From IMG/VR virus record IMGVR_UViG_3300042558_004148, positions 1 to 64,000 of that record: a stretch of DNA of 64,000 bases. One strand, 5' to 3'. A program made the translations under genes and the position numbers. This document shows, piece by piece, positions 1 through 40,095 of the stretch. Positions within the stretch are counted from its first letter, which is position 1; each line of letters begins with the position of its first letter. Under the pieces are notes generated by a model. It saw only the letters and a list, made by a program, of their open reading frames with translations. It was not told the DNA's origin and did no database searches.

Positions 1-2
1 CT

Positions 3-848
3 TCAGGTACTGATGGAACTTCAGGTACCGATGGAACAAGCGGAACAAGTGGTACCGATGGAACTTCTGGAACAAGTGGTACTGATGGAACTTCTGGAAC
101 AAGTGGTACTGATGGAACTTCAGGTACTGATGGAACAAGCGGAACTTCAGGTACTGATGGAACTTCTGGAACAAGTGGTACTGACGGAACAAGCGGAACA
201 AGTGGTACCGATGGAACTTCTGGAACAAGTGGTACTGATGGAACAAGTGGTACTGATGGAACAAGTGGTACTGATGGAACAAGCGGAACAAGTGGTACCG
301 ATGGAACTTCTGGAACAAGTGGTACTGATGGAACAAGTGGTACCAATGGAACTTCTGGAACATCAGGTACTGATGGAACAAGCGGAACAAGTGGTACTGA
401 TGGAACTTCTGGAACAAGTGGTACTGATGGAACTTCTGGAACAAGTGGTACTGATGGAACTTCAGGTACCGATGGAACAAGTGGTACCGATGGAACTTCT
501 GGAACAAGTGGTACTAATGGAACTTCTGGAACAAGTGGTACTGATGGAACCTCAGGAACTGATGGAACATCTGGAACCTCAGGAACTGATGGAACCTCAG
601 GAACTGATGGAACAAGTGGTACTGATGGAACAAGTGGTACTGATGGAACAAGTGGTACTGATGGAACAAGTGGTACTGATGGAACAAGTGGTACTGATGG
701 AACAAGTGGTACCGATGGAACAAGTGGTACCGATGGAACAAGTGGTACTAACGGTACATCGGGAACTGATGGAACTAATGGAACATCAGGTACTAACGGA
801 TCTTCAGGTACTAACGGAACATCAGGAACAGCTGGAACTAGCGGCGTA
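3..848 (+). repeat. Collagen-like Gly-X-Y block 1 (GTS/GTD-dominated)
   Basis: Tandem GGAACTTCA/GGTACTGAT/GGAACAAGT 9-mers encoding GTS-GTD; GTN appears only from about 745. Confidence 0.95.
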
Positions 849-3800
849 GATGGAATATCATCAGGTCAAATATATTTTTTCAATGAAAGTATTAATTCGG
901 ACGTTTCAGGTTACAAAGAATTAAGTTTAAATCCAACATCTACGGGTCAAGTAACGGTAACTACAAATTTAACAGGTAGTCAAACTGGTGCTTTAGTTCA
1001 AGATTTTATGACACCTGAATTAGGATTTTCAATAATACCTGGTGGTGTACAAAGATTTAAGTTATATTATTTACTACCTGCGGTAAACGCTGATGTTGAA
1101 GGGTATGTTGAAATCCAATTGGCTGATTCATCGGGGTCTTTAATGGGACCTACAATAACTTCTAATGTTAGTGCATTGCCTTATGTTGACCCAACTAATC
1201 CGGGATTACTTGAGGTTGATATAGTATTACCTACAACATCAATATCCACAACTGATAGAATGGCGATAAGACTTTATCTTAATAATTTAGATTCGACAAG
1301 TCGTAGTGTTGTATTTTATACTGAAGGTAATGCTAACTATTCATATATAATAACATCAGTTGGTCAAATCGCTGGTACATCAGGAACTTCAGGTACTAAC
1401 GGATCATCGGGATCAAACGGAACTTCAGGTACTAACGGTACTGACGGAACATCGGGAACTAATGGAACTTCAGGTACTAACGGTACTAATGGAACATCAG
1501 GTACTAACGGAACTAATGGAACTTCAGGTACTAACGGAACTAGTGGAACGGATGGTACGTCAGGAACTAATGGTACGTCAGGTACAAACGGAACCAATGG
1601 AACATCAGGAACCAATGGAACATCAGGAACCAATGGAACATCAGGAACAAACGGAACCAATGGTACCTCAGGTACTGACGGAACTTCAGGGACTGATGGA
1701 GGTAATTTAACAGCATCTAATTACGTTGCTAAAGGAGTTAAAGGAGGTACCATTCAAACAATAACAAATGGAAGTGACCAAGTTGTAACATTTGTTGATG
1801 AGTTTGACCCTAATGGTTGGATAACATCCAATAAATTCCAACCAAACATTGAAGGGTATTATATTATTCAAGTTTCGGTATGGTGGTATCCTGCGTCAAC
1901 AGTATCAGGGCAAAATAATATCCAACTTAGAAAAAATGGTAGTACACAAGTTGCGATTCAACAATTTCCACTTGTTACTACTGAAGGGTACGGTCAAGAA
2001 ATTGATATTATAGTATATTTTAATGGTTCTACTGATTATATCGAGGTTACTGCTTACACCTCTAATCCAACATCGCAAGACATACACGGTGAGAGTTCAG
2101 GTACTTGGATTACCGGATCATTAGTTGTTGGTGGCGGAACTTCAGGTACTGATGGAACTTCAGGTACTAATGGAACCAACGGAACATCAGGAACCAATGG
2201 AACCAATGGAACCAATGGTACTTCAGGTACTGACGGAACTTCAGGAACCAATGGAACATCAGGTACTAACGGAACATCAGGTACTAATGGATCCTCAGGA
2301 ACCAATGGAACATCAGGTACTAACGGTACTAACGGAACCTCAGGTACTAATGGATCCTCAGGAACCAATGGAACATCGGGTACTAACGGTACTGACGGAA
2401 CATCAGGTACTAACGGAACCTCAGGTACTAATGGATCCTCAGGTACTAACGGTACTGACGGAACATCAGGAGCCAATGGAACTTCAGGTACTAACGGTAC
2501 TAACGGAACCTCAGGTACTAACGGAACATCAGGTACTAACGGAACATCAGGAACTAACGGAACATCGGGTACTAACGGTACCAATGGAACATCAGGTACT
2601 AATGGATCCTCAGGTACTAACGGAACATCAGGAACCAATGGAACATCAGGTACTAACGGTACTAATGGAACATCAGGTACTAATGGAACATCAGGAACCA
2701 ATGGAACATCAGGAACCAATGGTACTGACGGAACATCAGGAACCAATGGAACATCAGGTACTAATGGATCCTCAGGTACTAACGGTACTAATGGAACATC
2801 AGGTACTAATGGAACATCAGGAACTAATGGAACCAACGGAACATCAGGTACTAATGGATCCTCAGGAACCAATGGAACATCAGGTACTAACGGTACTAAT
2901 GGAACATCTGGTACTAATGGATCCTCAGGAACCAATGGAACATCAGGTACTAACGGTACTAATGGAACATCTGGTACTAATGGATCCTCAGGAACCAATG
3001 GATCCTCAGGAACCAATGGAACATCAGGTACTAATGGAACCAACGGAACATCGGGTACTAATGGATCCTCAGGAACTAATGGAACATCAGGTACTAATGG
3101 AACCAACGGAACATCGGGTACTAATGGATCCTCAGGAACTAATGGAACATCAGGTACTAACGGTACTAATGGAACATCAGGAACCAACGGAACTAATGGA
3201 ACTTCAGGTACTAATGGAACTTCAGGTACTAATGGAACTTCAGGAACCAATGGAACTTCAGGAACTAACGGAACCAATGGAACTTCAGGAACCAATGGAA
3301 CATCAGGTACTAATGGAACTTCAGGAACCAATGGAACCAATGGAACTTCAGGTACTAACGGAACTTCAGGAACTAATGGAACCTCAGGAACCAACGGAAC
3401 TAATGGAACTTCAGGAACCAACGGAACTAATGGAACTTCAGGAACCAATGGAACTTCAGGAACCAATGGAACTAATGGAACCTCGGGTACTAACGGAACT
3501 TCGGGAACCAATGGAACCAATGGAACTTCAGGTACTAACGGAACTTCGGGAACCAATGGAACCAATGGAACTTCAGGTACTAACGGAACTTCAGGAACTA
3601 ATGGAACCTCAGGAACCAACGGAACTAATGGAACTTCAGGAACCAACGGAACCAATGGAACTTCAGGTGCTAACGGAACTTCAGGTACTAACGGTACTAA
3701 TGGATCTTCAGGTACTAATGGAACATCGGGTGTAAGCGGATTAAACGGTACTAATGGAACATCAGGTACTAATGGTACTAACGGAACATCGGGTACTAAC

Positions 3801-5582
3801 GGAACATCGGGTACTAACGGAACATCGGGTACTAACGGAACTAATGGAACTTCAGGAACTAATGGGACATCAGGTACTAACGGTACTAATGGAACTTCAG
3901 GAACTAATGGGACATCAGGTACTAACGGTACTAATGGAACTTCAGGAACCAATGGGACATCAGGTACTAATGGAACTTCAGGTACTAATGGAACTTCAGG
4001 TACTAATGGAACTTCAGGTACTAATGGAACATCAGGTATCAATGGTGTAGATGGTGCATCTGGAACATCGGGAACTAATGGAACTAATGGAACTTCAGGT
4101 ACTAACGGTAGTCCAGGTAGTCCAGGTAGCCCAGGAACATCTGGTACTAACGGTACTAACGGAACCTCAGGTACTAATGGAACTTCAGGTACTAACGGTA
4201 GTCCAGGTAGTCCAGGTAGCCCAGGAACATCAGGTACTAATGGTACTTCAGGTACTAGTAGTGGTGGTGCAGCTGCAGTTATTGTATTAGGTGGCGGTAT
4301 TTGTTCATCAATTAGATGTGGTGCGAATAACCAGGCAACTGCAAATTACAGTGCAGCCCTAAGCGGTAGATGCAATTCTTCAGGAGCTGCTTTTTCAGTA
4401 ATCAGTGGAGGTTGCTATAATCGAACAACTAACCTATCCTGTAATTCAGTAATCGGTGGAGGCCTTGTTAACTATATTAGCTCCTGTTATTCAACAATTG
4501 GTGGTGGTTGTCTTAACAGAGTTTGTATTCCAAGAGCTACCATTTCGGGAGGGTTATGTAACCTTATAACTGGTGCTTGCTCAACTATTGGTGGTGGATT
4601 TGATAATTCCATAGCTAGTCGTAGGGCAACTATCGGTGGAGGTAATACCAATAGTGCTGCAGGTGATTCAGATCTTGCAACAATTGGTGGTGGATGTGGA
4701 AATGAGATAGGTAGTTGTGGTATAGCTGCTGTGATTTCAGGAGGATATCAAAATTCCGTGGACGCTGGTTATTCAGCAATCGGAGGGGGAGCTTCAAATC
4801 AGATTGGTTCTGCTAGCCATAAATTTATCGGAGGAGGAAAGGGCAACTTTGTAACTAAAAACACAGGATGCTCCTCAGTTGTTGGAGGACAGGATAATGC
4901 CATTGATGGTGATGCCATAAGATCATTTATTGGAGGTGGATATGGAAATATTATCACTGGTTATGCTTGTCTTAGTTCGATCGCTGGTGGAAGGCAGAAT
5001 GCAATATATCAGGGTGCTTGCCATTCTTTTATCGGGGGCGGAAGATATCATAAAATTCGAAGTGGTTCATGTTATAGCTCCATAGGAGGTGGTTTTAATA
5101 ATGATACAGCAGGTTGCTATAATGTGCATATGTTAGGAAGTAATCTTACTGCTAATCAAAATAACGCAACATTTGTCCAATATATTGTTAAAACTGGTGG
5201 TGGTACTTTTAGTATTGACCACCCAAACCCTAAATTAAGTGATGAATTGAGATTAAATCACTCTTTTGTTGAATCACCAACAGCAGGGGATAATATTTAT
5301 AGATTTAATATTGTAGTTGTTAACGGGGAAGCAATAATTGACTTACCAGATTATTTCAAATATCTAAATAAAGACGCTCAAGTTTGGATAACACCTAAAA
5401 ATGGATTTGGAATTGCTTATGGTGTTATAGACGACACGTATTCAAAGATAACAATTAAGGCAAATCTTGATATAGAATATGATGTACTTGTTATAGGTAC
5501 AAGGAAAGATAAGAATACTAAATTCTGGAAAGGCGCTGAAACACCACAACCCAAAAGAACTGAAACCCCGCAATCAGAATAA
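3..5582 (+). CDS. Giant collagen-like tail or virion fibre protein, 5'-truncated by the window edge (at least about 1,860 aa)
   Basis: Frame 3 is open from base 3 through the listed ATG at 1008 (...GTSGVDGISSGQIYFFNESINSDVSGYKELSLNPTSTG...VQDF-MTPELG), so 1008 is an internal Met. Order: three G-T-[S/D/N] triplet blocks separated by globular domains, a GG beta-roll repeat, then a C-terminal FSIDHP...HSFVESP...IDLPDYF domain of the kind seen at phage fibre ends. Confidence 0.85.
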   Translation, partial: SGTDGTSGTDGTSGTSGTDGTSGTSGTDGTSGTSGTDGTSGTDGTSGTSGTDGTSGTSGTDGTSGTSGTDGTSGTSGTDGTSGTDGTSGTDGTSGTSGTDGTSGTSGTDGTSGTNGTSGTSGTDGTSGTSGTDGTSGTSGTDGTSGTSGTDGTSGTDGTSGTDGTSGTSGTNGTSGTSGTDGTSGTDGTSGTSGTDGTSGTDGTSGTDGTSGTDGTSGTDGTSGTDGTSGTDGTSGTDGTSGTDGTSGTNGTSGTDGTNGTSGTNGSSGTNGTSGTAGTSGVDGISSGQIYFFNESINSDVSGYKELSLNPTSTGQVTVTTNLTGSQTGALVQDFMTPELGFSIIPGGVQRFKLYYLLPAVNADVEGYVEIQLADSSGSLMGPTITSNVSALPYVDPTNPGLLEVDIVLPTTSISTTDRMAIRLYLNNLDSTSRSVVFYTEGNANYSYIITSVGQIAGTSGTSGTNGSSGSNGTSGTNGTDGTSGTNGTSGTNGTNGTSGTNGTNGTSGTNGTSGTDGTSGTNGTSGTNGTNGTSGTNGTSGTNGTSGTNGTNGTSGTDGTSGTDGGNLTASNYVAKGVKGGTIQTITNGSDQVVTFVDEFDPNGWITSNKFQPNIEGYYIIQVSVWWYPASTVSGQNNIQLRKNGSTQVAIQQFPLVTTEGYGQEIDIIVYFNGSTDYIEVTAYTSNPTSQDIHGESSGTWITGSLVVGGGTSGTDGTSGTNGTNGTSGTNGTNGTNGTSGTDGTSGTNGTSGTNGTSGTNGSSGTNGTSGTNGTNGTSGTNGSSGTNGTSGTNGTDGTSGTNGTSGTNGSSGTNGTDGTSGANGTSGTNGTNGTSGTNGTSGTNGTSGTNGTSGTNGTNGTSGTNGSSGTNGTSGTNGTSGTNGTNGTSGTNGTSGTNGTSGTNGTDGTSGTNGTSGTNGSSGTNGTNGTSGTNGTSGTNGTNGTSGTNGSSGTNGTSGTNGTNGTSGTNGSSGTNGTSGTNGTNGTSGTNGSSGTNGSSGTNGTSGTNGTNGTSGTNGSSGTNGTSGTNGTNGTSGTNGSSGTNGTSGTNGTNGTSGTNGTNGTSGTNGTSGTNGTSGTNGTSGTNGTNGTSGTNGTSGTNGTSGTNGTNGTSGTNGTSGTNGTSGTNGTNGTSGTNGTNGTSGTNGTSGTNGTNGTSGTNGTSGTNGTNGTSGTNGTSGTNGTNGTSGTNGTSGTNGTSGTNGTNGTSGTNGTNGTSGANGTSGTNGTNGSSGTNGTSGVSGLNGTNGTSGTNGTNGTSGTNGTSGTNGTSGTNGTNGTSGTNGTSGTNGTNGTSGTNGTSGTNGTNGTSGTNGTSGTNGTSGTNGTSGTNGTSGTNGTSGINGVDGASGTSGTNGTNGTSGTNGSPGSPGSPGTSGTNGTNGTSGTNGTSGTNGSPGSPGSPGTSGTNGTSGTSSGGAAAVIVLGGGICSSIRCGANNQATANYSAALSGRCNSSGAAFSVISGGCYNRTTNLSCNSVIGGGLVNYISSCYSTIGGGCLNRVCIPRATISGGLCNLITGACSTIGGGFDNSIASRRATIGGGNTNSAAGDSDLATIGGGCGNEIGSCGIAAVISGGYQNSVDAGYSAIGGGASNQIGSASHKFIGGGKGNFVTKNTGCSSVVGGQDNAIDGDAIRSFIGGGYGNIITGYACLSSIAGGRQNAIYQGACHSFIGGGRYHKIRSGSCYSSIGGGFNNDTAGCYNVHMLGSNLTANQNNATFVQYIVKTGGGTFSIDHPNPKLSDELRLNHSFVESPTAGDNIYRFNIVVVNGEAIIDLPDYFKYLNKDAQVWITPKNGFGIAYGVIDDTYSKITIKANLDIEYDVLVIGTRKDKNTKFWKGAETPQPKRTETPQSE
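1374..1700 (+). repeat. Collagen-like Gly-X-Y block 2 (GTS/GTN)
   Basis: GTSGTSGTNGSSGSNGTSGTNGTD... in the fibre frame. Confidence 0.95.
1713..2127 (+). other. C1q/TNF-like (BclA C-terminal-like) trimerisation domain inside the fibre
   Basis: Beta-rich ~140 aa between collagen blocks with the pattern F-x-P-x3-GYY-x-I...IQLRKNG...IVYFNGSTDYIEV...TWITGSLV, typical of C1q-like jelly rolls. Confidence 0.65.
2136..4259 (+). repeat. Collagen-like Gly-X-Y block 3 (~700 aa, GTS/GTN, two GSP inserts)
   Basis: About 2.1 kb of near-uninterrupted Gly every third residue; GSPGSPGSPG occurs twice near 4110 and 4200. Confidence 0.95.
4350..5115 (+). repeat. Cys-rich ~15-17 aa GG beta-roll repeats (adhesin-head-like)
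   Basis: About 15 repeats of [SA]-[TVF]-I-[GS]-G-G-x2-N, e.g. SVISGGCYN, STIGGGCLN, ATISGGLCN, SFIGGGYGN. Confidence 0.8.
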
Positions 5583-5634: not shown

Positions 5635-6456
5635 TTGATGAAAAAAATAATATTCAACTCATCATTACCTAGATCTGGATCAACACTTTGGCAAAATATA
5701 ATTGCACAAAATCCTGATTTCTATTGCACTCCCACTTCGGGACTTGCTGACATGGTGCTTTCCTCCAAGAACGCTTATAATAATTCGCAAGCTGTTTTAG
5801 CTCAGGATCCGGAGGTCATGAAGAAAGCTTTCATAGGATATTGTATGGCAGGAATTCAGGGATATTTTAATGACATAACGGACAAACCATTTGTACTCGA
5901 AAAAAGTAGGGAATGGGGAGTAAATTACGGACTTCTTAATATGCTCCAGCACGAACCCAAGGTTGTCTGTATGGTTAGGGATCTTAGATCCGTATATTCA
6001 TCAATGGAGAAGAATTTTAGAAAAAACCCACATCGCGAGAATCATGTGCAGAATGTTCCGGAATTGGTCGGTACAACTCTCAGAAAAAGAATAGATATTT
6101 GGGCTGATGGTGTACCTGTTGGTGTTTCTGTTGATAGATTGAGAGATATAATAGATCAGGGAATAGATAAAAATATACTTTTTATTAGATACGAGGACCT
6201 TATGAGCGATCCAGAATCAGAGGTTAAAAGATTCTACGACTATATAGGGATTGACTATTATCCAGGACATAATTTTAAAACAATCGAGCAGGTAACACAT
6301 GAAAATGATTTAATTCATGGAATATACGGTGATCATAAATTAAGAACCGAATTTAAAAGACTACCTGATGATTATGAGGAGATATTAGGATTTGAGCTTT
6401 CTCAGGCAATCAAGAATACCTATGGATGGTTCTATGATTATTTTGAATATGTGTAA
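5635..6456 (+). CDS. PAPS-dependent sulfotransferase
   Basis: N-terminal 5'-PSB loop SSLPRSGSTL; 3'-PB-like MVRDLRSVYSS; IRYEDL motif. Confidence 0.85.
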   Translation: MMKKIIFNSSLPRSGSTLWQNIIAQNPDFYCTPTSGLADMVLSSKNAYNNSQAVLAQDPEVMKKAFIGYCMAGIQGYFNDITDKPFVLEKSREWGVNYGLLNMLQHEPKVVCMVRDLRSVYSSMEKNFRKNPHRENHVQNVPELVGTTLRKRIDIWADGVPVGVSVDRLRDIIDQGIDKNILFIRYEDLMSDPESEVKRFYDYIGIDYYPGHNFKTIEQVTHENDLIHGIYGDHKLRTEFKRLPDDYEEILGFELSQAIKNTYGWFYDYFEYV

Positions 6457-6485
6457 TAAATAATCGATAATTAATTTTTATAATA

Positions 6486-7567: not shown

Positions 7568-8443
7568 ATGAATATAATATTGGAGGTTTCTGGTGGATTG
7601 GGTAAAAGCTTTATGTCCACCGCTGTAGTAAAAGCTTTACGTAAACAGTATACTAGAGATAACATAATAGTGGTAACATCATATCCCGATGTTTTTAAAG
7701 GTAATAATAATGTTAATAGAATTATTACCCACGCAAATGCGGGTCCAATTTATAGGGATTTTATTAACAACAAGGAAGCTAAAGTATTTATTACCGATCC
7801 ATACACAACCTCCGATTTTATAACGGAAAAAAAACATCTTATCGAGATATGGTGCGATTTGTGTGGTGTCCCTTATGATGGGGAACTGCCTGAATTATTT
7901 ATAAGTAAATCTGAAAGACAATATTATGAGCAGTTTTATAAATTAGATAAGCCTATAATGGCTATACATCCGAATGGTGGAAGCATAGAGCAACCTCTAA
8001 AATATAGCTGGACCCGAGATATTCCGCAACCAATAATTGAGAATATTATAGAGCACTATAAAGATGATTATTCCGTGGTACATATAAGAAGGGAAGATCA
8101 ATTTCAATATGATAACACAATTTCTGCATTGGATAATTTTAGAAGCATTGCAATTATGCTGACCCTTTCAGAAAAAAGACTTCTTATAGACTCATCTGCG
8201 ATGCATATAGCATCTTCCCTGGGTTTACCGTCAACAGTTGCCTGGATCGGAACAAATCCCAAAGTTTTTGGCTATAATATACATGATAATATAATTGCTA
8301 ATCCACATACGGAAAAGCACGATATATCGAATAATTACTATCAGAAATATATGTTATTTGAGGATATCAGTAGAATACCATATTCCGATATGAATGACAT
8401 TTTTAATATTAGCGATATTATAGATAGCATAAATAAACAATAA
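7568..8443 (+). CDS. GT9-like (ADP-heptose-type) glycosyltransferase
   Basis: SGGLGK...TAVVKALRK N-terminus; LLIDSSAMHIASSLGLPSTVAW C-terminal GT-B motif. Confidence 0.7.
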   Translation: MNIILEVSGGLGKSFMSTAVVKALRKQYTRDNIIVVTSYPDVFKGNNNVNRIITHANAGPIYRDFINNKEAKVFITDPYTTSDFITEKKHLIEIWCDLCGVPYDGELPELFISKSERQYYEQFYKLDKPIMAIHPNGGSIEQPLKYSWTRDIPQPIIENIIEHYKDDYSVVHIRREDQFQYDNTISALDNFRSIAIMLTLSEKRLLIDSSAMHIASSLGLPSTVAWIGTNPKVFGYNIHDNIIANPHTEKHDISNNYYQKYMLFEDISRIPYSDMNDIFNISDIIDSINKQ

Positions 8444-8736: not shown

Positions 8737-9669
8737 ATGAAGAAACTCTGTATAGATATAAGCGAGGCTAGAGCTATTGGCGATACATTATGTGTATCGC
8801 CAGTTTTGCGTAAACTATATTACTCATATGGTAGAAAAATATCTATAATAACTCATCATACAGATATATTTAGAAATAATCCATATGTTGATTCTCTATA
8901 TCTTCCTGGTGATCTTGATTTGGATGATGATTTCGAAATATTTAGAACTTTCGATGTAAACTATAAATCCGATGGCATATGCAATAAGCATAATACTATT
9001 GACATTAGGCAGTTCCATGCAATTAGCCTTGGATTCATGTTAAATCAGGAGGAACTTACTTTGGATTTTTTCCCTTCTGATTTTGAAGAAATACAGGGAC
9101 TTCCCGATAGATACGTTCTTATACATCCCGTACAAAACTGGGAATCCAGAACATGGGATAGAGAAAAATGGATTCTATTAGTCAGAGCTTTGAATGCGGG
9201 CGGAATAAGTGTGGTTTCTGTCGGAAAGGAGTCATCCGAAATGGGTGGATCCAATGTTCAAAAGCCAACCTTTAATTTTGATATTGAATTGGGTATGAAT
9301 TTACAGAACAAAACATCATTATCTCAGACGTGGTGGCTGATTGAAAAAAGTGAATGCTTCGTTACTATGGATTCTGGTCTTCTACATTTAGCAGGTACTA
9401 CCGATTCTGAAATAATTCAATTAGGCAGTTCAATAGATAATAAGTTTAGAGCACCATATAGAAAGGGATCTCAGGAATATAAATACCATTATGTTTCTGG
9501 TGGATGTAATTTGAAATGTGCGTCTGATATAAAATATGGTGTAAGAGAATGGAACACGATACAGGGAATACCTTCGTTGGTCGGATGTCTGGAGGGAAAG
9601 AAAACTTTCGAATGCCATCCAAGCGTAATGAGTGTTTATAATAAAATAATGTCCACTGTTAATAAATAA
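8737..9669 (+). CDS. GT9-family glycosyltransferase with C-terminal Cys cluster
   Basis: AIGDTLCVSPVLRKL; FVTMDSGLLHLAG; C-x3-C...C-x8-C near the C-terminus. Confidence 0.8.
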   Translation: MKKLCIDISEARAIGDTLCVSPVLRKLYYSYGRKISIITHHTDIFRNNPYVDSLYLPGDLDLDDDFEIFRTFDVNYKSDGICNKHNTIDIRQFHAISLGFMLNQEELTLDFFPSDFEEIQGLPDRYVLIHPVQNWESRTWDREKWILLVRALNAGGISVVSVGKESSEMGGSNVQKPTFNFDIELGMNLQNKTSLSQTWWLIEKSECFVTMDSGLLHLAGTTDSEIIQLGSSIDNKFRAPYRKGSQEYKYHYVSGGCNLKCASDIKYGVREWNTIQGIPSLVGCLEGKKTFECHPSVMSVYNKIMSTVNK

Positions 9670-9677
9670 GTATCCGG

Positions 9678-10607
9678 ATGGGTAATAAAATAATATTGAT
9701 TAGTTCATATTGCGATAATGAGGAAAAGATTAGTGTATTAGAATCTAATATAAGAACACTAAAAAATCTCGGTCTGGATGTTATGCTTAATAGTCCTATT
9801 GATATACCAAATAGGGTCTCCTCATTATGCGATTATTATATAAGAACTAAAGATAATCCGATTATCGACTGGCCAATTAAATCGGTATCGGTTTGGTCTG
9901 AATATCGATGTAAAGGGAAGAAAATAATTATGAATAGATGTCTACCTGATTACGGATGGGCAAATATCCATCAGGTAAAAAAATTATCAGAATATGCATT
10001 AACGTATGATTATGAATATTTCTACCATATAATATATGATATAAAAATTGACGATACCGTTTTGAGTGGTATACTATCCGATGCGGAATGTAATTTCTAT
10101 CATTTCCATGAGCATTGGGTAAGTCTACATTTTATGCTATTTGATAGGAAAAACTTAGTATCATTTATATCTGGATTAAATATAAATGAATATATTGAAT
10201 TTTGTGGAATTGCTGAAACCTGGCTAAAAAACTACCTGGAGAATTCAGATTTGCCGTATAAAGTGGATGATTGTTATGTTGATGACCATATACTTTTTCA
10301 TAATGGAGTAGATCTTTTTAATTATTCGGGATTTTCTGAATTTAGGTATTTCATAGCTAAAAATGCTATGGAAAATAATTCTATTAAAATTTATTTCTAT
10401 GGTGTTAAAAATCATATTGATTTAAAAATCCACCTTAATTCAACCACAAAAATATACGAAATAGCTGATAGAGATATAATAGATCTTGAATTATCTCGCG
10501 ATGACATGATATCTGTCATAATTGAATATAACGGATTAACCGAAGATATAACTGAAAAAATAAGATCCATAACACACAATAATATTAATTTATATGAAGA
10601 GAATTAA
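9678..10607 (+). CDS. Hypothetical protein in the glycosylation cluster
   Basis: 309-aa ORF overlapping the next gene; no confident family. Confidence 0.6.
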   Translation: MGNKIILISSYCDNEEKISVLESNIRTLKNLGLDVMLNSPIDIPNRVSSLCDYYIRTKDNPIIDWPIKSVSVWSEYRCKGKKIIMNRCLPDYGWANIHQVKKLSEYALTYDYEYFYHIIYDIKIDDTVLSGILSDAECNFYHFHEHWVSLHFMLFDRKNLVSFISGLNINEYIEFCGIAETWLKNYLENSDLPYKVDDCYVDDHILFHNGVDLFNYSGFSEFRYFIAKNAMENNSIKIYFYGVKNHIDLKIHLNSTTKIYEIADRDIIDLELSRDDMISVIIEYNGLTEDITEKIRSITHNNINLYEEN

Positions 10608-13473
10608 ACTATTATATTTAACCCCACATCTATCAACCGGTGGAATGCCTCAGTTCGCACTGAAGAGAATACAGAAACTTAATGAATATAGTGATGAGAT
10701 AGAAATCTTTGTTGTCGAGTACTCCAAATTTAGTGATACCTATGTTGTCCAAAGAAATTCAATACTTGAAATGATTGACAGTGATCATTTCTTTACACTG
10801 GGGGATACATCCGATACTAGAAGAAAATATGAGATAATTCAGATAATTAAGGATAATGATATAGATTTAGTTCATTCAGAGGAAATATTAGAGGGATTTG
10901 AAAGTTTTAATAAGATCCCTGCTGATTTAATTAACATGTTATATTCCGATGATAGAAGCTGGAGAATGATTGAAACCTGTCATAATATTTGGTTTGATCC
11001 GAAAGAATTTAAAAAATTAAAACCTGATGCATATTCATTAATTTCACCACATCATACGGAAAAAACATTCGCATCTGAGTCCTCATATAAGGAGCTTCAT
11101 CTATATCCATATGAGAATAAAACAGATATAAGAATAAAAAATAGGAAGAATTCTATCAAAAAACTGGGATTTGATAGAAATAAGAAAAACGTTCTCAATG
11201 TTGGATTATGGACTAGTGGAAAGAATCAGGGAGAGGGAATAGAAATTGCTAGATTCATAGAATCATCTAGTCCTGATGTATTTTTTCATTTTGTAGGTAA
11301 TTTAGCTCCAAATTTCGAAAATTACTGGGGAGATATAACAAAGAATCTACCAAGCAATGTTAAGATATGGGGGGAGCGTGACGATGTTGATGAATTCATG
11401 ATAGCATGTGACGCCATGATGTTTAATTCTACCTGGGAATGCAATCCTTTAGTTATAAGAGAAGCCATAGGATATGGCATGAAGATATTAGCCAGAAATC
11501 TACCGCAATATTATAACATGTATGATGGATACATCACTCCGATAGAGGGTGATATAAAAGAAATATCGGGACGACTTATTGATATGCTTGAATCTGATAT
11601 TGAATATCAGGTACCTGATGATTCTAATTTTGGTAGGACATTATTGGATTTCTATAGGAAGGTAATGGAGATAGAAATAACACCACAGCCTAAAATAGAA
11701 AATGACTACGAGTTTATACAACATTTTGTTGGTCAGCCCTATTTCGAATTAAGAGGCAGTAGTAGTAATAAATTTAAGGTGGAATTCTCTGATGGTGGAA
11801 AAATTATACATTCGGATCTCCTAAATTTTAATAGCTGGTCGAAATTAAACAGAAAATATTATACCAAATGGGACACAACGGTATATGAAAATGGTGAAAT
11901 AATATATAAGAATTCATTAGATCTTAGGGACAGAAGAGTTTATATTGCATTTGGATCTAAATCTCTAGGTGATACTCTTGCGTGGATACCTTACATGGAG
12001 GAATTTAGAAAAATTCATAATTGCGAATTGATAGTTTCTACGTTCATTAATCACTTATTCATTGAACAGTATCCCAATATTACTTTTGTCAATCCAGGGG
12101 AAACTGTAAATAATTTATATGCCCAATATAATATTGGATGGTATTATGACAGTAACGGAAATATTGATTATAATAAGGTTCCAAACGACTTTAGAAAACA
12201 ACCTTTACAGAAGACAGCCACTGATATACTCGGTCTCGAATATAAGGAAATAAAGCCTCGTTTAAATTTACCTAACGTGAAAAAAAAGAAAAAAGTTGGG
12301 ATAGGATTTCATTCAACTGCTCAGGCCAAATACTGGAACAATCCTAACGGATGGCAAGAGGTAATTGATCATCTTAATTCGATTGGTTATGAATGCATGA
12401 TATATTCCAGAGAGGGAGACGGATATATGAATAATGCATATCCAAAAAATGTTGATGTGTTTAAAGGCGGAAATCTACAGGATGTAATAAATGATCTGTG
12501 TGAGTGTGAATTTTTCATTGGCTTGGGCTCTGGATTAAGTTGGCTAGCTTGGTCATGTAAATTACCAATCATTTTGATTTCTGGATTTAGTGAAAGATTT
12601 TCTGAAACTTCATCCGACACATATAGAATTATTAACGAGGATGTTTGCCACGGATGCTTTAATTCGGAAATGCTAGATGCTGGAGATTGGAATTGGTGTC
12701 CATTACATAAAAATTCGGAGAGAATGTTTGAGTGTACAAAACAAATTAATTCTAATATGGTTACCAAGGAAATAGATAGATTAATTGGGGAAAATCACAT
12801 ACCAAATTTTGATTGGGGTTGGATGAACGATGGTAGTTCTAATGGTAATTATCACAAGAAACTTATGTATAATGAGATATTTGAGCAAAAAATATATGAG
12901 AGATTCTTTGAAGTTGATCATTCCGATATTGTATTGGATGTTGGTTCTAGCGTCGGCCCATTCACATATTCGATATTAAAGAAAAATCCTAAACATGTAT
13001 TTTGTATAGAACCTAGTGAGAGTGAATTTACTACACTAGTTAAAAATACATTAGGTAATCCGGTTACTCATATAAATAAGGGATTATCAGATATAAATGG
13101 AGTTATCGAATATGATCAATTATTTGGAGGAGAAACACATATGGAATCCATTACCTTTGATAAGCTCGTTAAATTATACGGTCTGAATAGGATAGATTTC
13201 ATGAAAACTGATTGTGAGGGCGGTGAATATGAGATTTTTAAGAAAGATAATCTTGACTTTATTAAAAAAAATATAAAGAAGATTGCCGGCGAATGGCATT
13301 TAATGAGTAAAGAAAATAAAGAAAAATTCAGGGATTTCCGGGATAATATATTAATAGAGTTCGATCGATATGAGGTATTATCATTAGATGGTATTGATAT
13401 AAAATGGGATCTATGGAACGAACATTTTATAGAGTATTATAATGAGGTCCTTATATACATAGATAATAGATAG
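10594..13473 (+). CDS. Three-domain enzyme: GT4 glycosyltransferase + Aah/TibC-type (BAHT) protein O-heptosyltransferase + FkbM-family methyltransferase
   Basis: GT4: PHLSTGGMPQ, GERDDV, ECNPLVIREA. BAHT: RVYIAFGSKSLGDTLAWIPY and the iron-finger VCHGCFN...WNWCPLHK...FECTKQI. FkbM: VLDVGSSVGPF, IDFMKTDCEGGEY. Confidence 0.8.
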   Translation: MKRIKLLYLTPHLSTGGMPQFALKRIQKLNEYSDEIEIFVVEYSKFSDTYVVQRNSILEMIDSDHFFTLGDTSDTRRKYEIIQIIKDNDIDLVHSEEILEGFESFNKIPADLINMLYSDDRSWRMIETCHNIWFDPKEFKKLKPDAYSLISPHHTEKTFASESSYKELHLYPYENKTDIRIKNRKNSIKKLGFDRNKKNVLNVGLWTSGKNQGEGIEIARFIESSSPDVFFHFVGNLAPNFENYWGDITKNLPSNVKIWGERDDVDEFMIACDAMMFNSTWECNPLVIREAIGYGMKILARNLPQYYNMYDGYITPIEGDIKEISGRLIDMLESDIEYQVPDDSNFGRTLLDFYRKVMEIEITPQPKIENDYEFIQHFVGQPYFELRGSSSNKFKVEFSDGGKIIHSDLLNFNSWSKLNRKYYTKWDTTVYENGEIIYKNSLDLRDRRVYIAFGSKSLGDTLAWIPYMEEFRKIHNCELIVSTFINHLFIEQYPNITFVNPGETVNNLYAQYNIGWYYDSNGNIDYNKVPNDFRKQPLQKTATDILGLEYKEIKPRLNLPNVKKKKKVGIGFHSTAQAKYWNNPNGWQEVIDHLNSIGYECMIYSREGDGYMNNAYPKNVDVFKGGNLQDVINDLCECEFFIGLGSGLSWLAWSCKLPIILISGFSERFSETSSDTYRIINEDVCHGCFNSEMLDAGDWNWCPLHKNSERMFECTKQINSNMVTKEIDRLIGENHIPNFDWGWMNDGSSNGNYHKKLMYNEIFEQKIYERFFEVDHSDIVLDVGSSVGPFTYSILKKNPKHVFCIEPSESEFTTLVKNTLGNPVTHINKGLSDINGVIEYDQLFGGETHMESITFDKLVKLYGLNRIDFMKTDCEGGEYEIFKKDNLDFIKKNIKKIAGEWHLMSKENKEKFRDFRDNILIEFDRYEVLSLDGIDIKWDLWNEHFIEYYNEVLIYIDNR

Positions 13474-13510: not shown

Positions 13511-13882
13511 ATGCGAATAGACGTTTCTGTGGGAGAAATTGTTGATAAGTTATCAATATTAGAAATTAAGAAAAATAATATATCGGATAGGGATAAACTT
13601 GTTAATATAAACAGTGAGTTTGAATACCTCTATTCGATTGTATTTAACGATCTTTTGATTGATTACGAAGATTTTTCCGGACTTGTTTTAATCAACGAGG
13701 AATTATGGAAGATAGAGGATAGGATAAGAATAAAGGAAAGAAGAAAAATATTTGACTCGGAATTTATATCTTTGGCTAGATCAGTTTATATAACTAATGA
13801 CAAAAGGTCAGAAATTAAAAAGTATATAAATTTAAAATATGGTTCTATTTTTACCGAGGAAAAATCATACGAAAAATACTAA
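13511..13882 (+). CDS. DUF6165-like protein
   Basis: VSVGEIVDKLSILEIK...NEELWKIEDRIR...ARSVYITNDKR pattern, typically found in glycosyltransferase clusters. Confidence 0.7.
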   Translation: MRIDVSVGEIVDKLSILEIKKNNISDRDKLVNINSEFEYLYSIVFNDLLIDYEDFSGLVLINEELWKIEDRIRIKERRKIFDSEFISLARSVYITNDKRSEIKKYINLKYGSIFTEEKSYEKY

Positions 13883-39126: not shown

Positions 39127-40095
39127 TTGGATTTATTAGATAAATTTAGATCTGTTAGAATATTGATTGTTGGCGATGTGATGCTGGATCATTATGTCCA
39201 TGGTAGCGTTACAAGAATCTCACCGGAGGCACCTGTCCCTATATTGGATGTAATACGCTCTGAATATTATTTGGGCGGATCTGGTAATATTTTACGTAAT
39301 ATAAAATCGATGGGAGGTAATGCTGATATAATTACTACGGTTGGCGATGATATTCACGGAAATACTATAAAAAATCTAGTAGCTGAATACAGCGACAATT
39401 CATTTATTTTTGAAGATTCTACCAGAAGAACAACACTAAAATCAAGATACATTTCAGGATCAAATCATCAATTATTTAGAGTCGATGACGAAAACCGTAA
39501 TTATATTGACTCGTTAACAGAAGAAATTATAATTTCTAGATTTAACGAGATGTACATTAATTATGATTGCGTTTTAATTGAGGATTATAATAAAGGTCTT
39601 TTGACACCAGCTATGATATCTAATATAATATCAAAATGTAATATTTCTGGTATTCCAGCTATAGCAGACCCCAAGATTTTAAATATTCCTAGTTATTCAG
39701 GTTGTAGCTTACTCAAGCCAAATCTATCTGAATTTTCTAACATGACTGGATTTAATGGTTCTAATTTGGATCTAATTAGTATAGAGCAGCATGCTAGGAA
39801 ATTTATATCCGATAATGATATTGATTCAATATTGGTAACCTTATCAGAAAGAGGATTAATCTATATCAACAAGGATGAATCCGTTTATGATCCTGGATAT
39901 CCAATGGATGTATATGATGTTTCGGGAGCGGGAGACACTGTTATATCGATTTTATCATTATGCATGGTAAGTAATATAGGGATCAGGGAATCATTATCGA
40001 TTTGTAATATAGCTGCTTCCATAGCTTGTTCTAAATCAGGAACTGTTGCTGTCGATATTAATGATATTTTAAATTCAAAATTTTATACATTCTAA
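39127..40095 (+). CDS. rfaE: D-glycero-D-manno-heptose-7-phosphate kinase (RfaE/HldE domain I, PfkB family)
   Basis: ILIVGDVMLDHY-x2-GSVTRISPEAPVP, EDYNKG, DVSGAGDT signature motifs. Confidence 0.9.
   Translation: MDLLDKFRSVRILIVGDVMLDHYVHGSVTRISPEAPVPILDVIRSEYYLGGSGNILRNIKSMGGNADIITTVGDDIHGNTIKNLVAEYSDNSFIFEDSTRRTTLKSRYISGSNHQLFRVDDENRNYIDSLTEEIIISRFNEMYINYDCVLIEDYNKGLLTPAMISNIISKCNISGIPAIADPKILNIPSYSGCSLLKPNLSEFSNMTGFNGSNLDLISIEQHARKFISDNDIDSILVTLSERGLIYINKDESVYDPGYPMDVYDVSGAGDTVISILSLCMVSNIGIRESLSICNIAASIACSKSGTVAVDINDILNSKFYTF

What the first reader, a model, noticed from the sequence alone, without database searches (positions are those of the whole stretch)
10594..13473. Phage Aah/TibC-family protein O-heptosyltransferase fused between GT4 and FkbM domains
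Seen: the middle third keeps the BAHT hallmarks, GSKSLGDTLAW and the four-Cys finger CHGC-x13-C-x11-C (VCHGCFN...WCPLHK...FECTK). Established: BAHTs are iron-containing dodecamers known from enteric and related bacteria that act on autotransporter adhesins. Inference: a single polypeptide that primes with heptose, extends with a GT4 sugar and caps with O-methyl would be an assembly-line glycosylation enzyme. I do not recall a characterised phage example.
Basis: partly seen in the sequence, partly recalled or inferred. Interest (0 to 1): 0.82.

Follow-up and report, generated by a model that had tools for sequence, protein, structure and literature searches.

The report
Phage fibre-glycosylating three-module heptosyltransferase enzyme
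A giant bacteriophage encodes one 959-residue protein that joins a TibC/Aah-type protein heptosyltransferase to a second glycosyltransferase and a methyltransferase, and comparative genomics suggests it decorates the phage's own serine/threonine-rich collagen-like fibre rather than a bacterial autotransporter.

Summary
Window 10594-13473 (+) is one uninterrupted 959-aa ORF made of three modules: GT4 (aa 1-358), a complete BAHT module (aa ~373-731) and FkbM (aa 742-959). The BAHT module scores 273 bits on TIGR04414 (cutoff 200), matches TibC at E 9e-66 and TM 0.81-0.84, and keeps the catalytic Asp and all four iron-finger Cys.

The genome is an uncultured ~373-kb jumbo myophage. The architecture is common: more than 3,000 metagenomic homologues exist, and the three modules occur fused, pairwise fused or as adjacent genes.

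The gene lies in a late structural operon, 5 kb downstream of a ~2,700-aa fibre made of hundreds of proline-free G-T-(S/N/D) triplets. It is surrounded by two GT9-like genes, a sulfotransferase and an APS-kinase-like gene, and the phage also encodes a heptose-7-phosphate kinase homologue.

Ser/Thr-rich G-X-Y genes accompany this BAHT subfamily in phages (40 of 75 loci) and in bacterial chromosomes (14 of 15 versus 0 of 20 loci, p = 6e-9).

My best reading is a phage-encoded glycosylation line for its own fibre. Neither the acceptor, the heptose donor, the order of steps, the iron nor the oligomer has been shown experimentally. I rate it a new variant of a known kind, interest 0.7.

The parts
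10594..13473 (+). 959-aa three-module enzyme (GT4 - BAHT - FkbM). Its start overlaps the upstream ORF by 14 nt.
10594..11667 (+). Module 1 (aa 1-358): GT-B fold glycosyltransferase of family GT4. The E-x7-E motif is at aa 282-290.
   Evidence: PF00534 above GA. Foldseek matches to BshA, MshA, WaaG and PimB'. Motif position. E282 is invariant and E290 is >=90% conserved.
11710..11916 (+). N-terminal beta-barrel of the BAHT module (aa 373-441), seven of the eight strands modelled between aa 373 and 453.
   Evidence: DSSP on the model. The Foldseek alignment spans ~385 of TibC's 389 residues. TibC barrel role from PMC4358343.
11929..12786 (+). BAHT catalytic domain (aa 446-731). Key residues: D460 (TibC D110), T575, K579, W650, thumb tip Y611/M612, V631 in place of R286, G645 in place of P300.
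12646..12735 (+). Four-Cys finger C685, C688, C702, C714, aligned with TibC C339, C342, C358 and C370, which bind Fe(III).
12817..13470 (+). Module 3 (aa 742-959): FkbM-family SAM methyltransferase. Motif I VLDVGSSVG is at aa 780-788. A low-confidence linker at aa 733-737 precedes it.
1..5582 (+). 3' part of a ~2,700-aa fibre gene that starts at the other end of the circular contig. It holds G-T-(S/N/D) triplet arrays, internal globular domains, a UspA1-head-like repeat region (about nt 4395-5200) and a C-terminal domain. This is the candidate acceptor.
5635..6456 (+). Sulfotransferase
   Evidence: PF13469 and PF00685
6486..6935 (+). APS-kinase-like P-loop kinase
   Evidence: PF01583 at 48 bits and TIGR00455
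6905..7309 (+). Small HxGH nucleotidyltransferase that overlaps the kinase ORF. The two ORFs match the N- and C-terminal halves of a single PHROG family. Its role is open: sulfate or heptose-1-P adenylyltransferase.
7568..8443 (+). 291-aa GT9-like protein, a lead only
   Evidence: ESM Atlas 0.98 to viral PF01075 clusters. No Pfam hit.
8737..9669 (+). 310-aa GT9 heptosyltransferase-family protein, conserved next to the fusion in 18 other loci
   Evidence: PF01075 at 51 bits. Weak hits to the LPS heptosyltransferase I-III models, below their cutoffs. Synteny.
9678..10607 (+). 309-aa virus-only module that elsewhere forms the N-terminus of multidomain phage glycosyltransferases
13511..13882 (+). 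DUF6165 protein, function unknown
39127..40095 (+). [quoted passage not shown]
   Evidence: TIGR02198 at 301.5 bits, E 6e-90, full length, cutoff 345. tblastn.

Best explanation
The ORF encodes a late-expressed, cytoplasmic, three-module enzyme that builds a short modified glycan on a phage structural protein. The most likely acceptor is the adjacent ~2,700-aa fibre, whose G-T-(S/N/D) triplets put a Ser or Thr at nearly every non-glycine position. The BAHT module is shown to be a close structural and sequence relative of TibC with the catalytic set intact. I infer that it transfers the first sugar, most probably a heptose from ADP-heptose, to Ser hydroxyls. I further infer that the GT4 module adds a second sugar and the FkbM module O-methylates it. 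The neighbouring GT9-like proteins and the sulfotransferase, fed by an APS-kinase-like gene, would elaborate the glycan further. The glycan coat would stabilise, stiffen or shield a proline-free collagen-like fibre, or tune how it binds receptors.
For: 1. Family membership of each module.
2. Catalytic residues: D460, K579, W650 and the four Cys are invariant or nearly so in 143 metagenomic cluster representatives and 79 cellular homologues.
3. Functional coupling: the three modules occur fused, pairwise fused or as adjacent genes.
4. Position: the gene lies on the same strand as the fibre, neck and terminase genes and overlaps its upstream neighbour. The terminase lies within 10 kb in 24 other loci.
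5. Acceptor, phage side: 40 of 75 non-redundant BAHT-seeded viral loci carry a G-X-Y ORF in the flank, nearly all with X = T/S and Y = S/N/D, many of them within 2 kb of the BAHT gene.
6. Acceptor, reciprocal test: among fibre-seeded loci, a BAHT gene is present in 7 of 16 with Ser/Thr-rich fibres against 1 of 57 with other G-X-Y proteins (p = 5e-5).
7. Acceptor, independent replicate in bacterial genomes: 14 of 15 full-flank loci of the phage-like BAHT group have an adjacent Ser/Thr-rich G-X-Y gene, against 0 of 20 for the rest of the homologues, which include Enterobacterales, Negativicutes and Lentisphaeria (p = 6e-9).
8. A minimal bacterial cassette sits between lgt/thyA/ppa and phoA-like genes: a BAHT gene next to a gene for a signal peptide plus about 40 GTS triplets. 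Most of the other adjacent bacterial G-X-Y proteins also begin with a signal-peptide-like or lipobox-like N-terminus, judged by eye.
9. Donor: an HldA-like kinase is in the window, and rfaE-domain-I/II-like genes are adjacent to the BAHT gene in 21 related loci.
10. Precedents: tibC-tibA adjacency and cytoplasmic Ser heptosylation (PMC4358343). sgtA lies immediately upstream of bclA3 and adds O-GlcNAc to Thr in GPT repeats (PMC7157674).
Against: There are no biochemical data of any kind. The adenine-contacting Arg of TibC (R286), whose Ala mutant loses activity, is Val here. The heptose-kinase hit is just below its equivalog cutoff, and no GmhA, GmhB or clear heptose-1-P adenylyltransferase was found in the 64 kb I could see. 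35 of 75 BAHT loci show no G-X-Y gene in the flank; many of those are truncated, and one subgroup has an ordinary 2,800-aa fibre instead. Gene adjacency is circumstantial, because phage fibre regions often accumulate accessory genes. TibC modifies Ser in beta-helix loops, and recognition of a G-X-Y repeat has no experimental precedent. It is not shown that a proline-free G-T-S array forms a collagen triple helix at all. The N- and C-terminal fusions might be incompatible with the TibC-type dodecamer.
Confidence: 0.55

Rival explanations
1. Host-surface remodelling. The enzyme and its island modify host envelope molecules during infection, for example to block superinfection or alter receptors. 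Targets could be host G-(S/T)-S repeat lipoproteins, autotransporters or LPS core.
For: Bacteria have the BAHT plus exported G-(S/T)-S protein cassette, so a host may offer such acceptors. The GT9 neighbours belong to the LPS heptosyltransferase family. Phage-encoded serotype conversion is well known (established knowledge).
Against: The gene sits in the virion structural operon next to a fibre made of the same repeat type, and this pairing recurs across divergent phages. Jumbo lytic phages have little time to profit from envelope remodelling. No flippase, ligase or membrane GT was detected in the island; the only membrane-like ORF is an 84-aa DUF2061 protein.
Confidence: 0.15
2. Glycosylation of another virion protein (capsid, decoration, neck or sheath) rather than the fibre, as in mycobacteriophages whose capsid and tail-tube C-termini carry glycans.
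For: The gene is flanked by neck and terminase genes. The mycobacteriophage precedent is cited in PMC12619734. A subgroup of loci lacks G-X-Y fibres.
Against: This does not explain the specific two-way association with Ser/Thr-rich G-X-Y genes in phages and bacteria.
Confidence: 0.15
3. The BAHT-like module is a protein O-glycosyltransferase that uses a donor other than ADP-heptose.
For: Val replaces the adenine-N1-contacting Arg (R286). Only 42 of 143 metagenomic cluster representatives keep Arg, against 62 of 79 cellular homologues. Gly replaces the C6-stereochemistry determinant P300.
Against: All 21 loci with rfaE-like genes next to the BAHT gene also have Val or Leu at that position. This phage encodes a heptose-7-P kinase homologue. 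W650, T575 and K579, which contact the heptose and the beta-phosphate, are conserved. Gly at the P300 position also occurs in 3 of 6 Enterobacterales homologues.
Confidence: 0.25
4. DNA hypermodification or an anti-defence role for the glycosyltransferases.
For: Phage GTs often glycosylate DNA (discussion in PMC12619734). A related GT4-FkbM protein hits the 'GT4-conflict' Pfam family.
Against: No base-modification genes are in the island. BAHT is a protein-Ser transferase family. There were no PADLOC hits. The genes sit in a late structural context.
Confidence: 0.03

Closest known systems
TibC / AAH bacterial autotransporter heptosyltransferases (BAHT; TIGR04414; PDB 4RAP, 4RB4; PMC4358343)
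   Same: 36-39% identity over the whole ~385-residue enzyme, including the N-terminal beta-barrel. TM-score is 0.81-0.84. The catalytic Asp, the Thr/Lys/Trp donor contacts, the four Fe-binding Cys, the hydrophobic thumb tip and F368 are all present. The gene lies next to a long repetitive, exported or external protein.
   Different: Here the enzyme is fused to GT4 and FkbM modules. Val replaces the adenine-contacting Arg. The enzyme is encoded by a jumbo phage. The neighbouring candidate acceptor is a G-T-(S/N/D) collagen-like fibre, not a type Va autotransporter. Iron binding, the dodecamer and heptose transfer are untested.
SgtA-BclA3 of Clostridioides difficile and the BclA exosporium glycoproteins (PMC7157674)
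   Same: A glycosyltransferase gene sits beside the gene for a collagen-like G-X-Thr repeat protein, and the enzyme O-glycosylates Thr/Ser within the repeats. The product is a hair-like surface fibre.
   Different: SgtA is an unrelated O-GlcNAc transferase that uses UDP-GlcNAc. The repeats there are GPT (proline-containing), and the system is bacterial.
Mimivirus collagen-modifying enzymes (L230, R699; PMC9546862, PMC12279948)
   Same: A large virus encodes both collagen-like proteins and its own enzymes to glycosylate them. Related phage loci even carry P4H-type 2OG oxygenases and GT25 domains.
   Different: Mimivirus hydroxylates Lys and glucosylates hydroxylysine with GT families unrelated to BAHT, and it infects a eukaryote.
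Mycobacteriophage virion glycosylation (Freeman et al. 2023, as cited in PMC12619734)
   Same: Phage-encoded glycosyltransferases decorate the phage's own structural proteins.
   Different: That system has different GT families, different acceptors (capsid and tail-tube C-termini) and no heptose, BAHT or collagen-like fibre.
LPS core heptosyltransferases WaaC/WaaF/WaaQ (GT9)
   Same: The BAHT catalytic core shares their fold family and ADP-heptose donor. Two further GT9-like genes are in the island.
   Different: Their acceptor is a lipid-linked oligosaccharide, and they have no beta-barrel, thumb or Cys4 finger. The fusion scores only 12.5 bits on the heptosyltransferase I model, against 273 bits on the BAHT model.

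Membership tests
BAHT (Aah/TibC protein O-heptosyltransferases) | Scores above the curated cutoff of the equivalog HMM TIGR04414 | tested here: met
   273.2 bits against a cutoff of 200, E 3e-81, model positions 39-373 of 374
BAHT (Aah/TibC protein O-heptosyltransferases) | Protomer fold: N-terminal beta-barrel, two-lobe catalytic domain, beta-hairpin thumb and finger insertion | tested here: met
   AF2 model at pLDDT 88.8. Foldseek to 4RAP/4RB4 gives TM 0.81-0.84 over 370-389 columns.
BAHT (Aah/TibC protein O-heptosyltransferases) | Catalytic base Asp (TibC D110) and donor contacts T226, K230, W305 | tested here: met
   D460, T575, K579 and W650 align and are invariant or nearly so in the family
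BAHT (Aah/TibC protein O-heptosyltransferases) | Arg contacting adenine N1 (TibC R286), the proposed basis of ADP specificity | tested here: not met
   Val631 is at this position. Among the 28 full-length three-module homologues the majority residue there is Val. 62 of 79 cellular homologues have Arg.
BAHT (Aah/TibC protein O-heptosyltransferases) | Four Cys that coordinate Fe(III) (C339, C342, C358, C370) | tested here: met
   C685, C688, C702 and C714 have identical spacing. The metal itself cannot be tested in silico.
BAHT (Aah/TibC protein O-heptosyltransferases) | Iron content and ring-shaped dodecamer | not testable with these tools
   Only indirect evidence exists: the hydrophobic thumb tip Y611/M612 (TibC F265/V266) and F712 (F368) are conserved. 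The effect of the N- and C-terminal fusions on ring assembly is unknown.
BAHT (Aah/TibC protein O-heptosyltransferases) | Donor is ADP-heptose | tested here: inconclusive
   An HldA-like kinase is in the window at 301.5 bits, cutoff 345. rfaE-like genes lie beside the BAHT gene in 21 related loci. There is no assay.
BAHT (Aah/TibC protein O-heptosyltransferases) | Acceptor is a type Va (AIDA-I/TibA-type) autotransporter encoded next door | tested here: not met
   The neighbour is a phage fibre with collagen-type repeats. No autotransporter domain was found in the island by Pfam. The fibre does carry a trimeric-autotransporter (UspA1) head-like repeat region, but only in this phage.
BAHT (Aah/TibC protein O-heptosyltransferases) | Stand-alone enzyme of about 400 aa | tested here: not met
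   959 aa with GT4 and FkbM modules. Stand-alone 382-aa versions exist in related phages.
GT4 retaining glycosyltransferases | Pfam PF00534 above GA, GT-B fold, E-x7-E motif | tested here: met
   33.8 bits against 26.4. Foldseek to BshA, MshA and WaaG at E ~1e-10 to 1e-11. E282-x7-E290. The donor and the anomeric outcome were not tested.
FkbM-family methyltransferases | PF05050 and TIGR01444 above cutoffs, SAM motif I | tested here: met
   34.8 bits against 22.7 and 46.5 bits against 37.7. VLDVGSSVG at aa 780-788. The substrate was not tested.
Collagen-like triple-helix proteins (for the candidate acceptor fibre) | Uninterrupted G-X-Y repeats with Pro/Hyp that stabilise a triple helix | tested here: inconclusive
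   Pfam Collagen at E 2e-114, and several hundred G-X-Y triplets (368 counted in the window part, plus about 180 in the part at the other contig end). X is about 92% Thr (337 of 368 triplets) and Y is Ser, Asn or Asp, with almost no Pro. Whether a triple helix forms is unproven.

The most novel reading that the evidence does not exclude
A whole subfamily of BAHT-type enzymes, in phages and in environmental bacteria, has a previously unrecognised acceptor class: exported or virion proteins built of proline-free G-(S/T)-(S/N) triplets. In this phage a TibC-like ring enzyme with on-board GT4 and methyltransferase modules would thread the fibre. It would coat it processively with a methylated (and, through neighbouring genes, sulfated) heptose-containing glycan, and the sugar would take over the stabilising role of hydroxyproline. 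The result would be a virus-made, mucin-like 'bottle-brush' fibre several hundred nanometres long.
Probability: 0.3. Interest if true: 0.85.

Novelty: new variant of a known kind. Interest (0 to 1): 0.7.

Why it matters
BAHTs are known only as virulence-associated enzymes that hyper-heptosylate enterobacterial autotransporter adhesins. Here, all of the 150 best-scoring family clusters score closer to this phage domain than TibC does, and most are multidomain proteins.

A phage-like clade of the family is tied to Ser/Thr-rich collagen-like proteins in both phages and bacterial chromosomes. If the inference holds, it defines a new acceptor class and a new biological role for the family: self-glycosylation of phage fibres.

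It would also offer a natural one-polypeptide glycosylation 'assembly line' for glyco-engineering. And it would show how a proline-free collagen-like fibre might be stabilised.

The idea is directly testable, because a cultured phage (Microcystis phage Mel-JY01) and a genome-sequenced strain listed without a MAG label (Methylomicrobium lacus 22M6SE5-12) carry relatives of the BAHT gene. Mel-JY01 also has Ser/Thr-rich G-X-Y genes close to it; no such gene passed my threshold in the M. lacus flank, but a Methylomicrobium MAG (L172) has one.

Tried and rejected
1. Megablast of the gene against GenBank phages found nothing. tblastn found only five records with partial matches: Microcystis phage Mel-JY01 and three uncultured huge phages matching the BAHT part, and Synechococcus phage DSL-LC02 matching only the FkbM part.
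2. The UspA1-head-like beta-roll of the fibre looked like the natural 'autotransporter-like' acceptor. I rejected it as the general partner because the motif occurs only in this phage among 75 loci.
3. I considered the missing R286 as evidence against ADP-heptose. I rejected this because every locus with adjacent rfaE-like genes also lacks the Arg.
4. I suspected that ORF 8737 (GT9 with a C-terminal Cys cluster) was a second BAHT with a finger. BLAST against the BAHT module gave only E 0.05, and TIGR04414 scored 26.7 bits, far below cutoff, so this is unsupported.
5. A defence or anti-defence role found no support: there were no PADLOC hits.
6. The 'moraphage' paper (PMC12619734) mentions four core glycosyltransferase orthogroups but no heptosyltransferase or collagen. 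Whether it covers the same lineage is unresolved.
7. The 2,800-aa fibre next to stand-alone BAHTs shows no informative repeats.
I therefore made no read-level or expression check.
9. The first genome-contig query got no answer, and the repeat worked.
10. The AU test of one clade did not finish in time. I used bipartition and support values instead.
11. The ESM Atlas results for ORFs 7568 and 9678 are leads only.


Full report

Yes. The ORF listing gives one uninterrupted ORF at 10594..13473 (+), 959 aa.
- Pfam finds Glycos_transf_1 (aa 184-336, above the gathering score) and FkbM/Methyltransf_21 (above the gathering score). It also finds a sub-threshold GT9 match in the middle.
- NCBIfam places the middle part in TIGR04414, 'autotransporter strand-loop-strand O-heptosyltransferase', at 273 bits against a curated cutoff of 200. 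The C-terminus falls in TIGR01444 (FkbM), above its cutoff.
- A sequence search of the PDB finds only TibC (4RAP/4RB4), at E 9e-66.

These scores are far beyond chance.

**2. Residue-level comparison with TibC**

Residue roles come from the TibC structure paper (PMC4358343).
- The catalytic base D110 aligns with D460.
- The beta-phosphate and heptose contacts T226, K230 and W305 align with T575, K579 and W650.
- The four Fe(III) ligands C339, C342, C358 and C370 align with C685, C688, C702 and C714.
- The hydrophobic thumb tip F265/V266 aligns with Y611/M612, and F368 aligns with F712.
- In 28 full-length homologues these residues are invariant. Across 143 metagenomic 50%-cluster representatives and 79 homologues from cellular genomes, the Asp, Lys, Trp and Cys columns are essentially invariant.

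Two positions differ.
- R286 contacts adenine N1, and its Ala mutant is inactive. It is Val631 here.
- P300 is the D,D-heptose selectivity determinant (Ser in AAH). It is Gly645 here.

Gly or Ser at the second position is common even in Enterobacterales. Arg at the first position is kept by 62 of 79 cellular homologues but only 42 of 143 metagenomic representatives.

**3. Structure**

An AlphaFold2 model built on a 58-sequence alignment has mean pLDDT 88.8. Its pTM of 0.52 is expected for beads on a string. It resolves:
- a GT-B domain (aa 1-358);
- a beta-barrel (strands modelled between aa 373 and 453);
- the BAHT catalytic domain (to aa 731);
- a disordered linker (aa 733-737);
- a Rossmann-type methyltransferase (aa 742-957).

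Foldseek against the PDB returns all TibC chains first, with TM 0.81-0.84 normalised to TibC, 370-389 aligned columns and 36-39% identity. So the BAHT module is complete, barrel included. The next hits are retaining GT4 enzymes (BshA, MshA, WaaG, PimB') for the N-terminal module. The GT4 E-x7-E motif (aa 282-290) and the FkbM SAM motif I (aa 780-788) are present.

**4. What genome is this?**

The window carries a large terminase, a 1,117-aa tail sheath, a T4-type neck protein, two portal genes and a DNA ligase.
- The terminase is only 31-39% identical to those of metagenomic 'huge phages', Sphingomonas phage PAU, Lak phages and Tenacibaculum phage PTm1.
- An identical copy of the protein lies on IMG/VR contigs of 343-373 kb.
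- The window is the first 64 kb of a 373,485-bp contig whose last 127 nt repeat its first 127 nt, so the assembly is circular.
- This is an uncultured jumbo myophage. Its host is unknown.

**5. The fusion is a family, not a one-off**

More than 3,000 metagenomic proteins match the whole protein. The best ~120 share 54-88% identity (most 59-68%) and contain the same modules. Some carry extra GT2, GT8, GT25 or methyltransferase domains, reaching 1,200-1,550 aa.

In 74 non-identical viral loci the modules appear in several arrangements:
- GT4-BAHT-FkbM;
- GT4-BAHT;
- a separate GT4 gene followed by BAHT-FkbM;
- a 720-aa GT4 protein followed by a stand-alone 382-aa BAHT;
- other N-terminal domains fused to BAHT.

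This Rosetta-stone pattern argues that the three activities work on one product. An exhaustive HMMER search finds 1,439 clusters (at 50% identity) with a BAHT-like domain. The 150 best all score above TibC, and most are multidomain proteins. GenBank phage genomes hold very few: Microcystis phage Mel-JY01 and three metagenomic huge phages carry a BAHT-like part, and Synechococcus phage DSL-LC02 matches only the FkbM part. UniProt viral entries are auto-named only. I found no paper on a phage BAHT.

**6. The neighbourhood in the window**

All genes from base 1 to about 22.5 kb are on the + strand with short gaps or overlaps. In order they are:
- the fibre gene;
- a sulfotransferase (5635);
- an APS-kinase-like gene (6486);
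- a small HxGH nucleotidyltransferase that overlaps it (6905);
- DUF2061 (7309);
- a GT9-like gene (7568);
- a 91-aa ORF;
- a GT9 gene (8737);
- a 309-aa virus-only module that elsewhere forms the N-terminus of multidomain GTs (9678);
- the fusion (10594);
- DUF6165 (13511);
- the neck protein, a 262-aa ORF and the terminase.

[quoted passage not shown] It scores 301.5 bits on TIGR02198 (E 6e-90), just under the 345-bit equivalog cutoff. In 21 related loci, rfaE-domain-I-like and/or domain-II-like genes lie beside the BAHT gene. All of those BAHTs have Val or Leu at the R286 position. The missing Arg therefore does not speak against ADP-heptose.

**7. The fibre**

The database call of 1,524 aa from Met at 1008 is wrong. 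The frame is open from window base 3, and the upstream 'ORF' 13..849 is an out-of-frame reading of repeat DNA. The gene starts at the other end of the contig (L086 nt 8900) and crosses the junction, giving about 2,700 aa.

It contains four arrays of G-T-(S/N/D) triplets. In the window part, 337 of 368 X positions are Thr, Y is Ser, Asn or Asp, and there is almost no Pro. The arrays are interrupted by globular domains. A Cys-rich region of ~15-residue 'S-x-I-G-G-G-x-x-N' repeats follows, which matches the head of the trimeric autotransporter adhesin UspA1 (PDB 3PR7, E 1e-12). A C-terminal domain ends the protein.

The UspA1-like region is suggestive, because TibC modifies Ser in N-S-G-G-type loops. 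It occurs only in this phage among 75 loci, however.

**8. Which partner is conserved?**

- *Forward test.* 40 of 75 non-redundant BAHT-seeded loci have a G-X-Y ORF within the flank, although many flanks are truncated. In nearly all, X = T/S and Y = S/N/D, and the ORF often lies within 2 kb.
- *Reverse test.* I seeded with the repeat. A BAHT gene is present in 7 of 16 loci whose longest G-X-Y run is Ser/Thr-rich, against 1 of 57 with other compositions (Fisher p = 5e-5). The de-duplication was rough.
- *Independent replicate in cellular genomes (GTDB scan).* The 25 homologues most like the phage domain are labelled Methylococcales, Burkholderiaceae, Bradyrhizobium, Pseudobdellovibrionaceae, Arenicellales, other Gammaproteobacteria and a few short MAG contigs of other labels. 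Among those with full flanks, 14 of 15 have an adjacent Ser/Thr-rich G-X-Y gene. Among the remaining homologues, which include Enterobacterales, Negativicutes and Lentisphaeria, 0 of 20 do (p = 6e-9). None of these loci has phage hallmark genes.
- *A minimal cassette.* On a 2.67-Mb Methylococcales contig the cassette sits between lgt, thyA and ppa on one side and an alkaline-phosphatase-like gene on the other (assigned by eye from the translations). It consists of a 371-aa BAHT gene convergent with a 293-aa protein made of a signal peptide, about 40 GTS triplets and a C-terminal domain. Most other examples begin with a signal-peptide-like or lipobox-like N-terminus, judged by eye.
- *Tree.* In an IQ-TREE analysis the phage sequences plus those 25 cellular ones form one side of a bipartition. 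That branch is itself unsupported, but a 50-row clade with 97% SH-aLRT contains only them.
- *A cultured phage.* Mel-JY01 shows the same pairing. G-(T/S)-S repeats lie on the + strand, under two minus-strand 'hypothetical protein' calls, 2.5-4.7 kb upstream of a 1,226-aa protein with a GT4-like N-terminal part, a methyltransferase-like middle part and a C-terminal BAHT domain. Only the BAHT part was confirmed by a search (tblastn, 46% identity over query residues 354-731); the other two parts were read by eye.

Related loci add a P4H-type 2OG oxygenase, a Skp1-type GlcNAc transferase (PF11397), GT25 domains and fibrinogen-C-like proteins. All of these point to protein modification, specifically of collagen-like proteins.

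**9. Mechanism proposed**

*Shown:* there are three intact catalytic modules, and one of them is a genuine BAHT-family member by HMM, fold and catalytic residues.

*Inferred from comparative genomics:* the acceptor is the Ser/Thr-rich G-X-Y fibre, glycosylated in the cytoplasm before or during virion assembly. TibA and AIDA-I are likewise modified before export.

*Inferred from family knowledge:*
- BAHT transfers heptose from ADP-heptose to Ser. TibC modifies Ser and not Thr, and Ser in the Y position followed by Gly is the common feature of the repeats.
- GT4 adds a further sugar.
- FkbM O-methylates.
- The neighbouring GT9-like proteins and the sulfotransferase extend and sulfate the glycan.

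*Speculative:* the enzyme forms a TibC-like ring that acts processively on the fibre, and the glycan substitutes for hydroxyproline in stabilising a triple helix.

Precedents for glycosylated collagen-like surface fibres whose GT is encoded next door are SgtA-BclA3 (PMC7157674) and the Mimivirus collagen enzymes (PMC9546862).

**10. Caveats**

- Adjacency is not proof.
- 35 of 75 loci show no G-X-Y gene in the available flank.
- I could see only 64 of 373 kb, so the heptose pathway is incomplete.
- G-X-Y without Pro may fold differently (polyproline-II or polyglycine-II type bundles exist), or it may be a disordered mucin-like stalk.
- Iron, the oligomeric state, the donor, the acceptor and the order of steps all need experiments.

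**11. Verdict**

This is a member of the BAHT family by sequence and fold, but in a new architecture, a new host (a jumbo phage) and very probably with a new acceptor class. I rate it a new variant of a known kind, interest 0.7.

Noticed in passing
window 1-5582 and L086 8900-11547: The fibre gene is mis-called in public gene tables as 1,524 aa plus a 473-aa out-of-frame product. The true ORF starts near the other contig end, crosses the 127-nt terminal overlap of the circular assembly and ends at window 5582, giving about 2,700 aa. The assembly break lies inside the repeat, so the real repeat number is uncertain.
   Followed up: yes
window 4395-5200: The fibre's C-terminal region has about 12 Cys-rich ~15-residue 'S-x-I-G-G-G-x-x-N' repeats that match the head of the Moraxella trimeric autotransporter adhesin UspA1 (PDB 3PR7, E 1e-12). 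This region is present only in this phage among 75 related loci.
   Followed up: yes
window 5635-7309: A sulfotransferase is followed by an APS-kinase-like ORF and an overlapping small HxGH nucleotidyltransferase. The latter two match the N- and C-terminal halves of one PHROG family (phrog_10255), so they are fused in other phages. This may be a phage PAPS-synthesis module for sulfating the glycan or the protein.
   Followed up: partly
window 39127-40095: A full-length HldA-like heptose-7-phosphate kinase (TIGR02198, 301.5 bits) sits among replication genes (DNA ligase, clamp-loader-like), 25 kb from the glycosylation island.
   Followed up: partly
window 35879-37477 and 37482-39098: Two tandem T4-type portal (gp20-like) paralogues are 51% identical over their full length, which is unusual for a tailed phage.
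   Followed up: partly
window 60133-61542: An asparagine synthase (GATase plus Asn_synthase domains) is encoded by the phage, a possible auxiliary metabolic gene. Asn is abundant in the fibre repeats.
   Followed up: no
window 1-4400 (fibre repeats): Every G-T-N-G-T-S unit creates an N-G-T or N-G-S sequon, so there are hundreds of potential N-glycosylation sites. I noticed no HMW1C-type N-glycosyltransferase among the ORFs I scanned; there was no dedicated search.
   Followed up: no
L168 8001-10068 (Methylococcales MAG, 2.67-Mb contig); also L167, L171-L174, L178, L180, L182-L186 and L188: Bacterial chromosomes carry a minimal cassette between housekeeping genes. It is a stand-alone ~375-aa BAHT homologue next to a small G-(S/T)-S repeat protein that usually begins with a signal-peptide-like or lipobox-like N-terminus, judged by eye.
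   Followed up: yes
L001 14-2280 (Microcystis phage Mel-JY01, PP395634.1): Two annotated minus-strand 'hypothetical protein' CDSs overlap plus-strand G-(T/S)-S collagen-like reading frames with GPP caps, so the deposited annotation probably has the wrong strand. A 1,226-aa protein with a confirmed C-terminal BAHT domain (and GT4-like and methyltransferase-like parts read by eye) lies 2.5 kb downstream.
   Followed up: partly
L033 13183-13797, L021 2141-3469 and L012 8378-12958 (related viral loci): Related islands carry a P4H-type 2OG-Fe(II) oxygenase (14 loci), a Skp1-type hydroxyproline GlcNAc transferase (PF11397, 13 loci) and GT25 domains. This toolkit resembles eukaryotic collagen and Skp1 modification.
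   Followed up: partly
L072 791-9196: A 2,802-aa tail-fibre gene next to stand-alone BAHT genes has a sub-threshold Intein_splicing match (31 bits, GA 35.8) at about aa 2361-2498.
   Followed up: no
window 13511-13882: A DUF6165 protein (with a weak DUF4254 match) lies immediately downstream of the fusion. Its function is unknown, and it is conserved in only 3-4 other loci.
   Followed up: no
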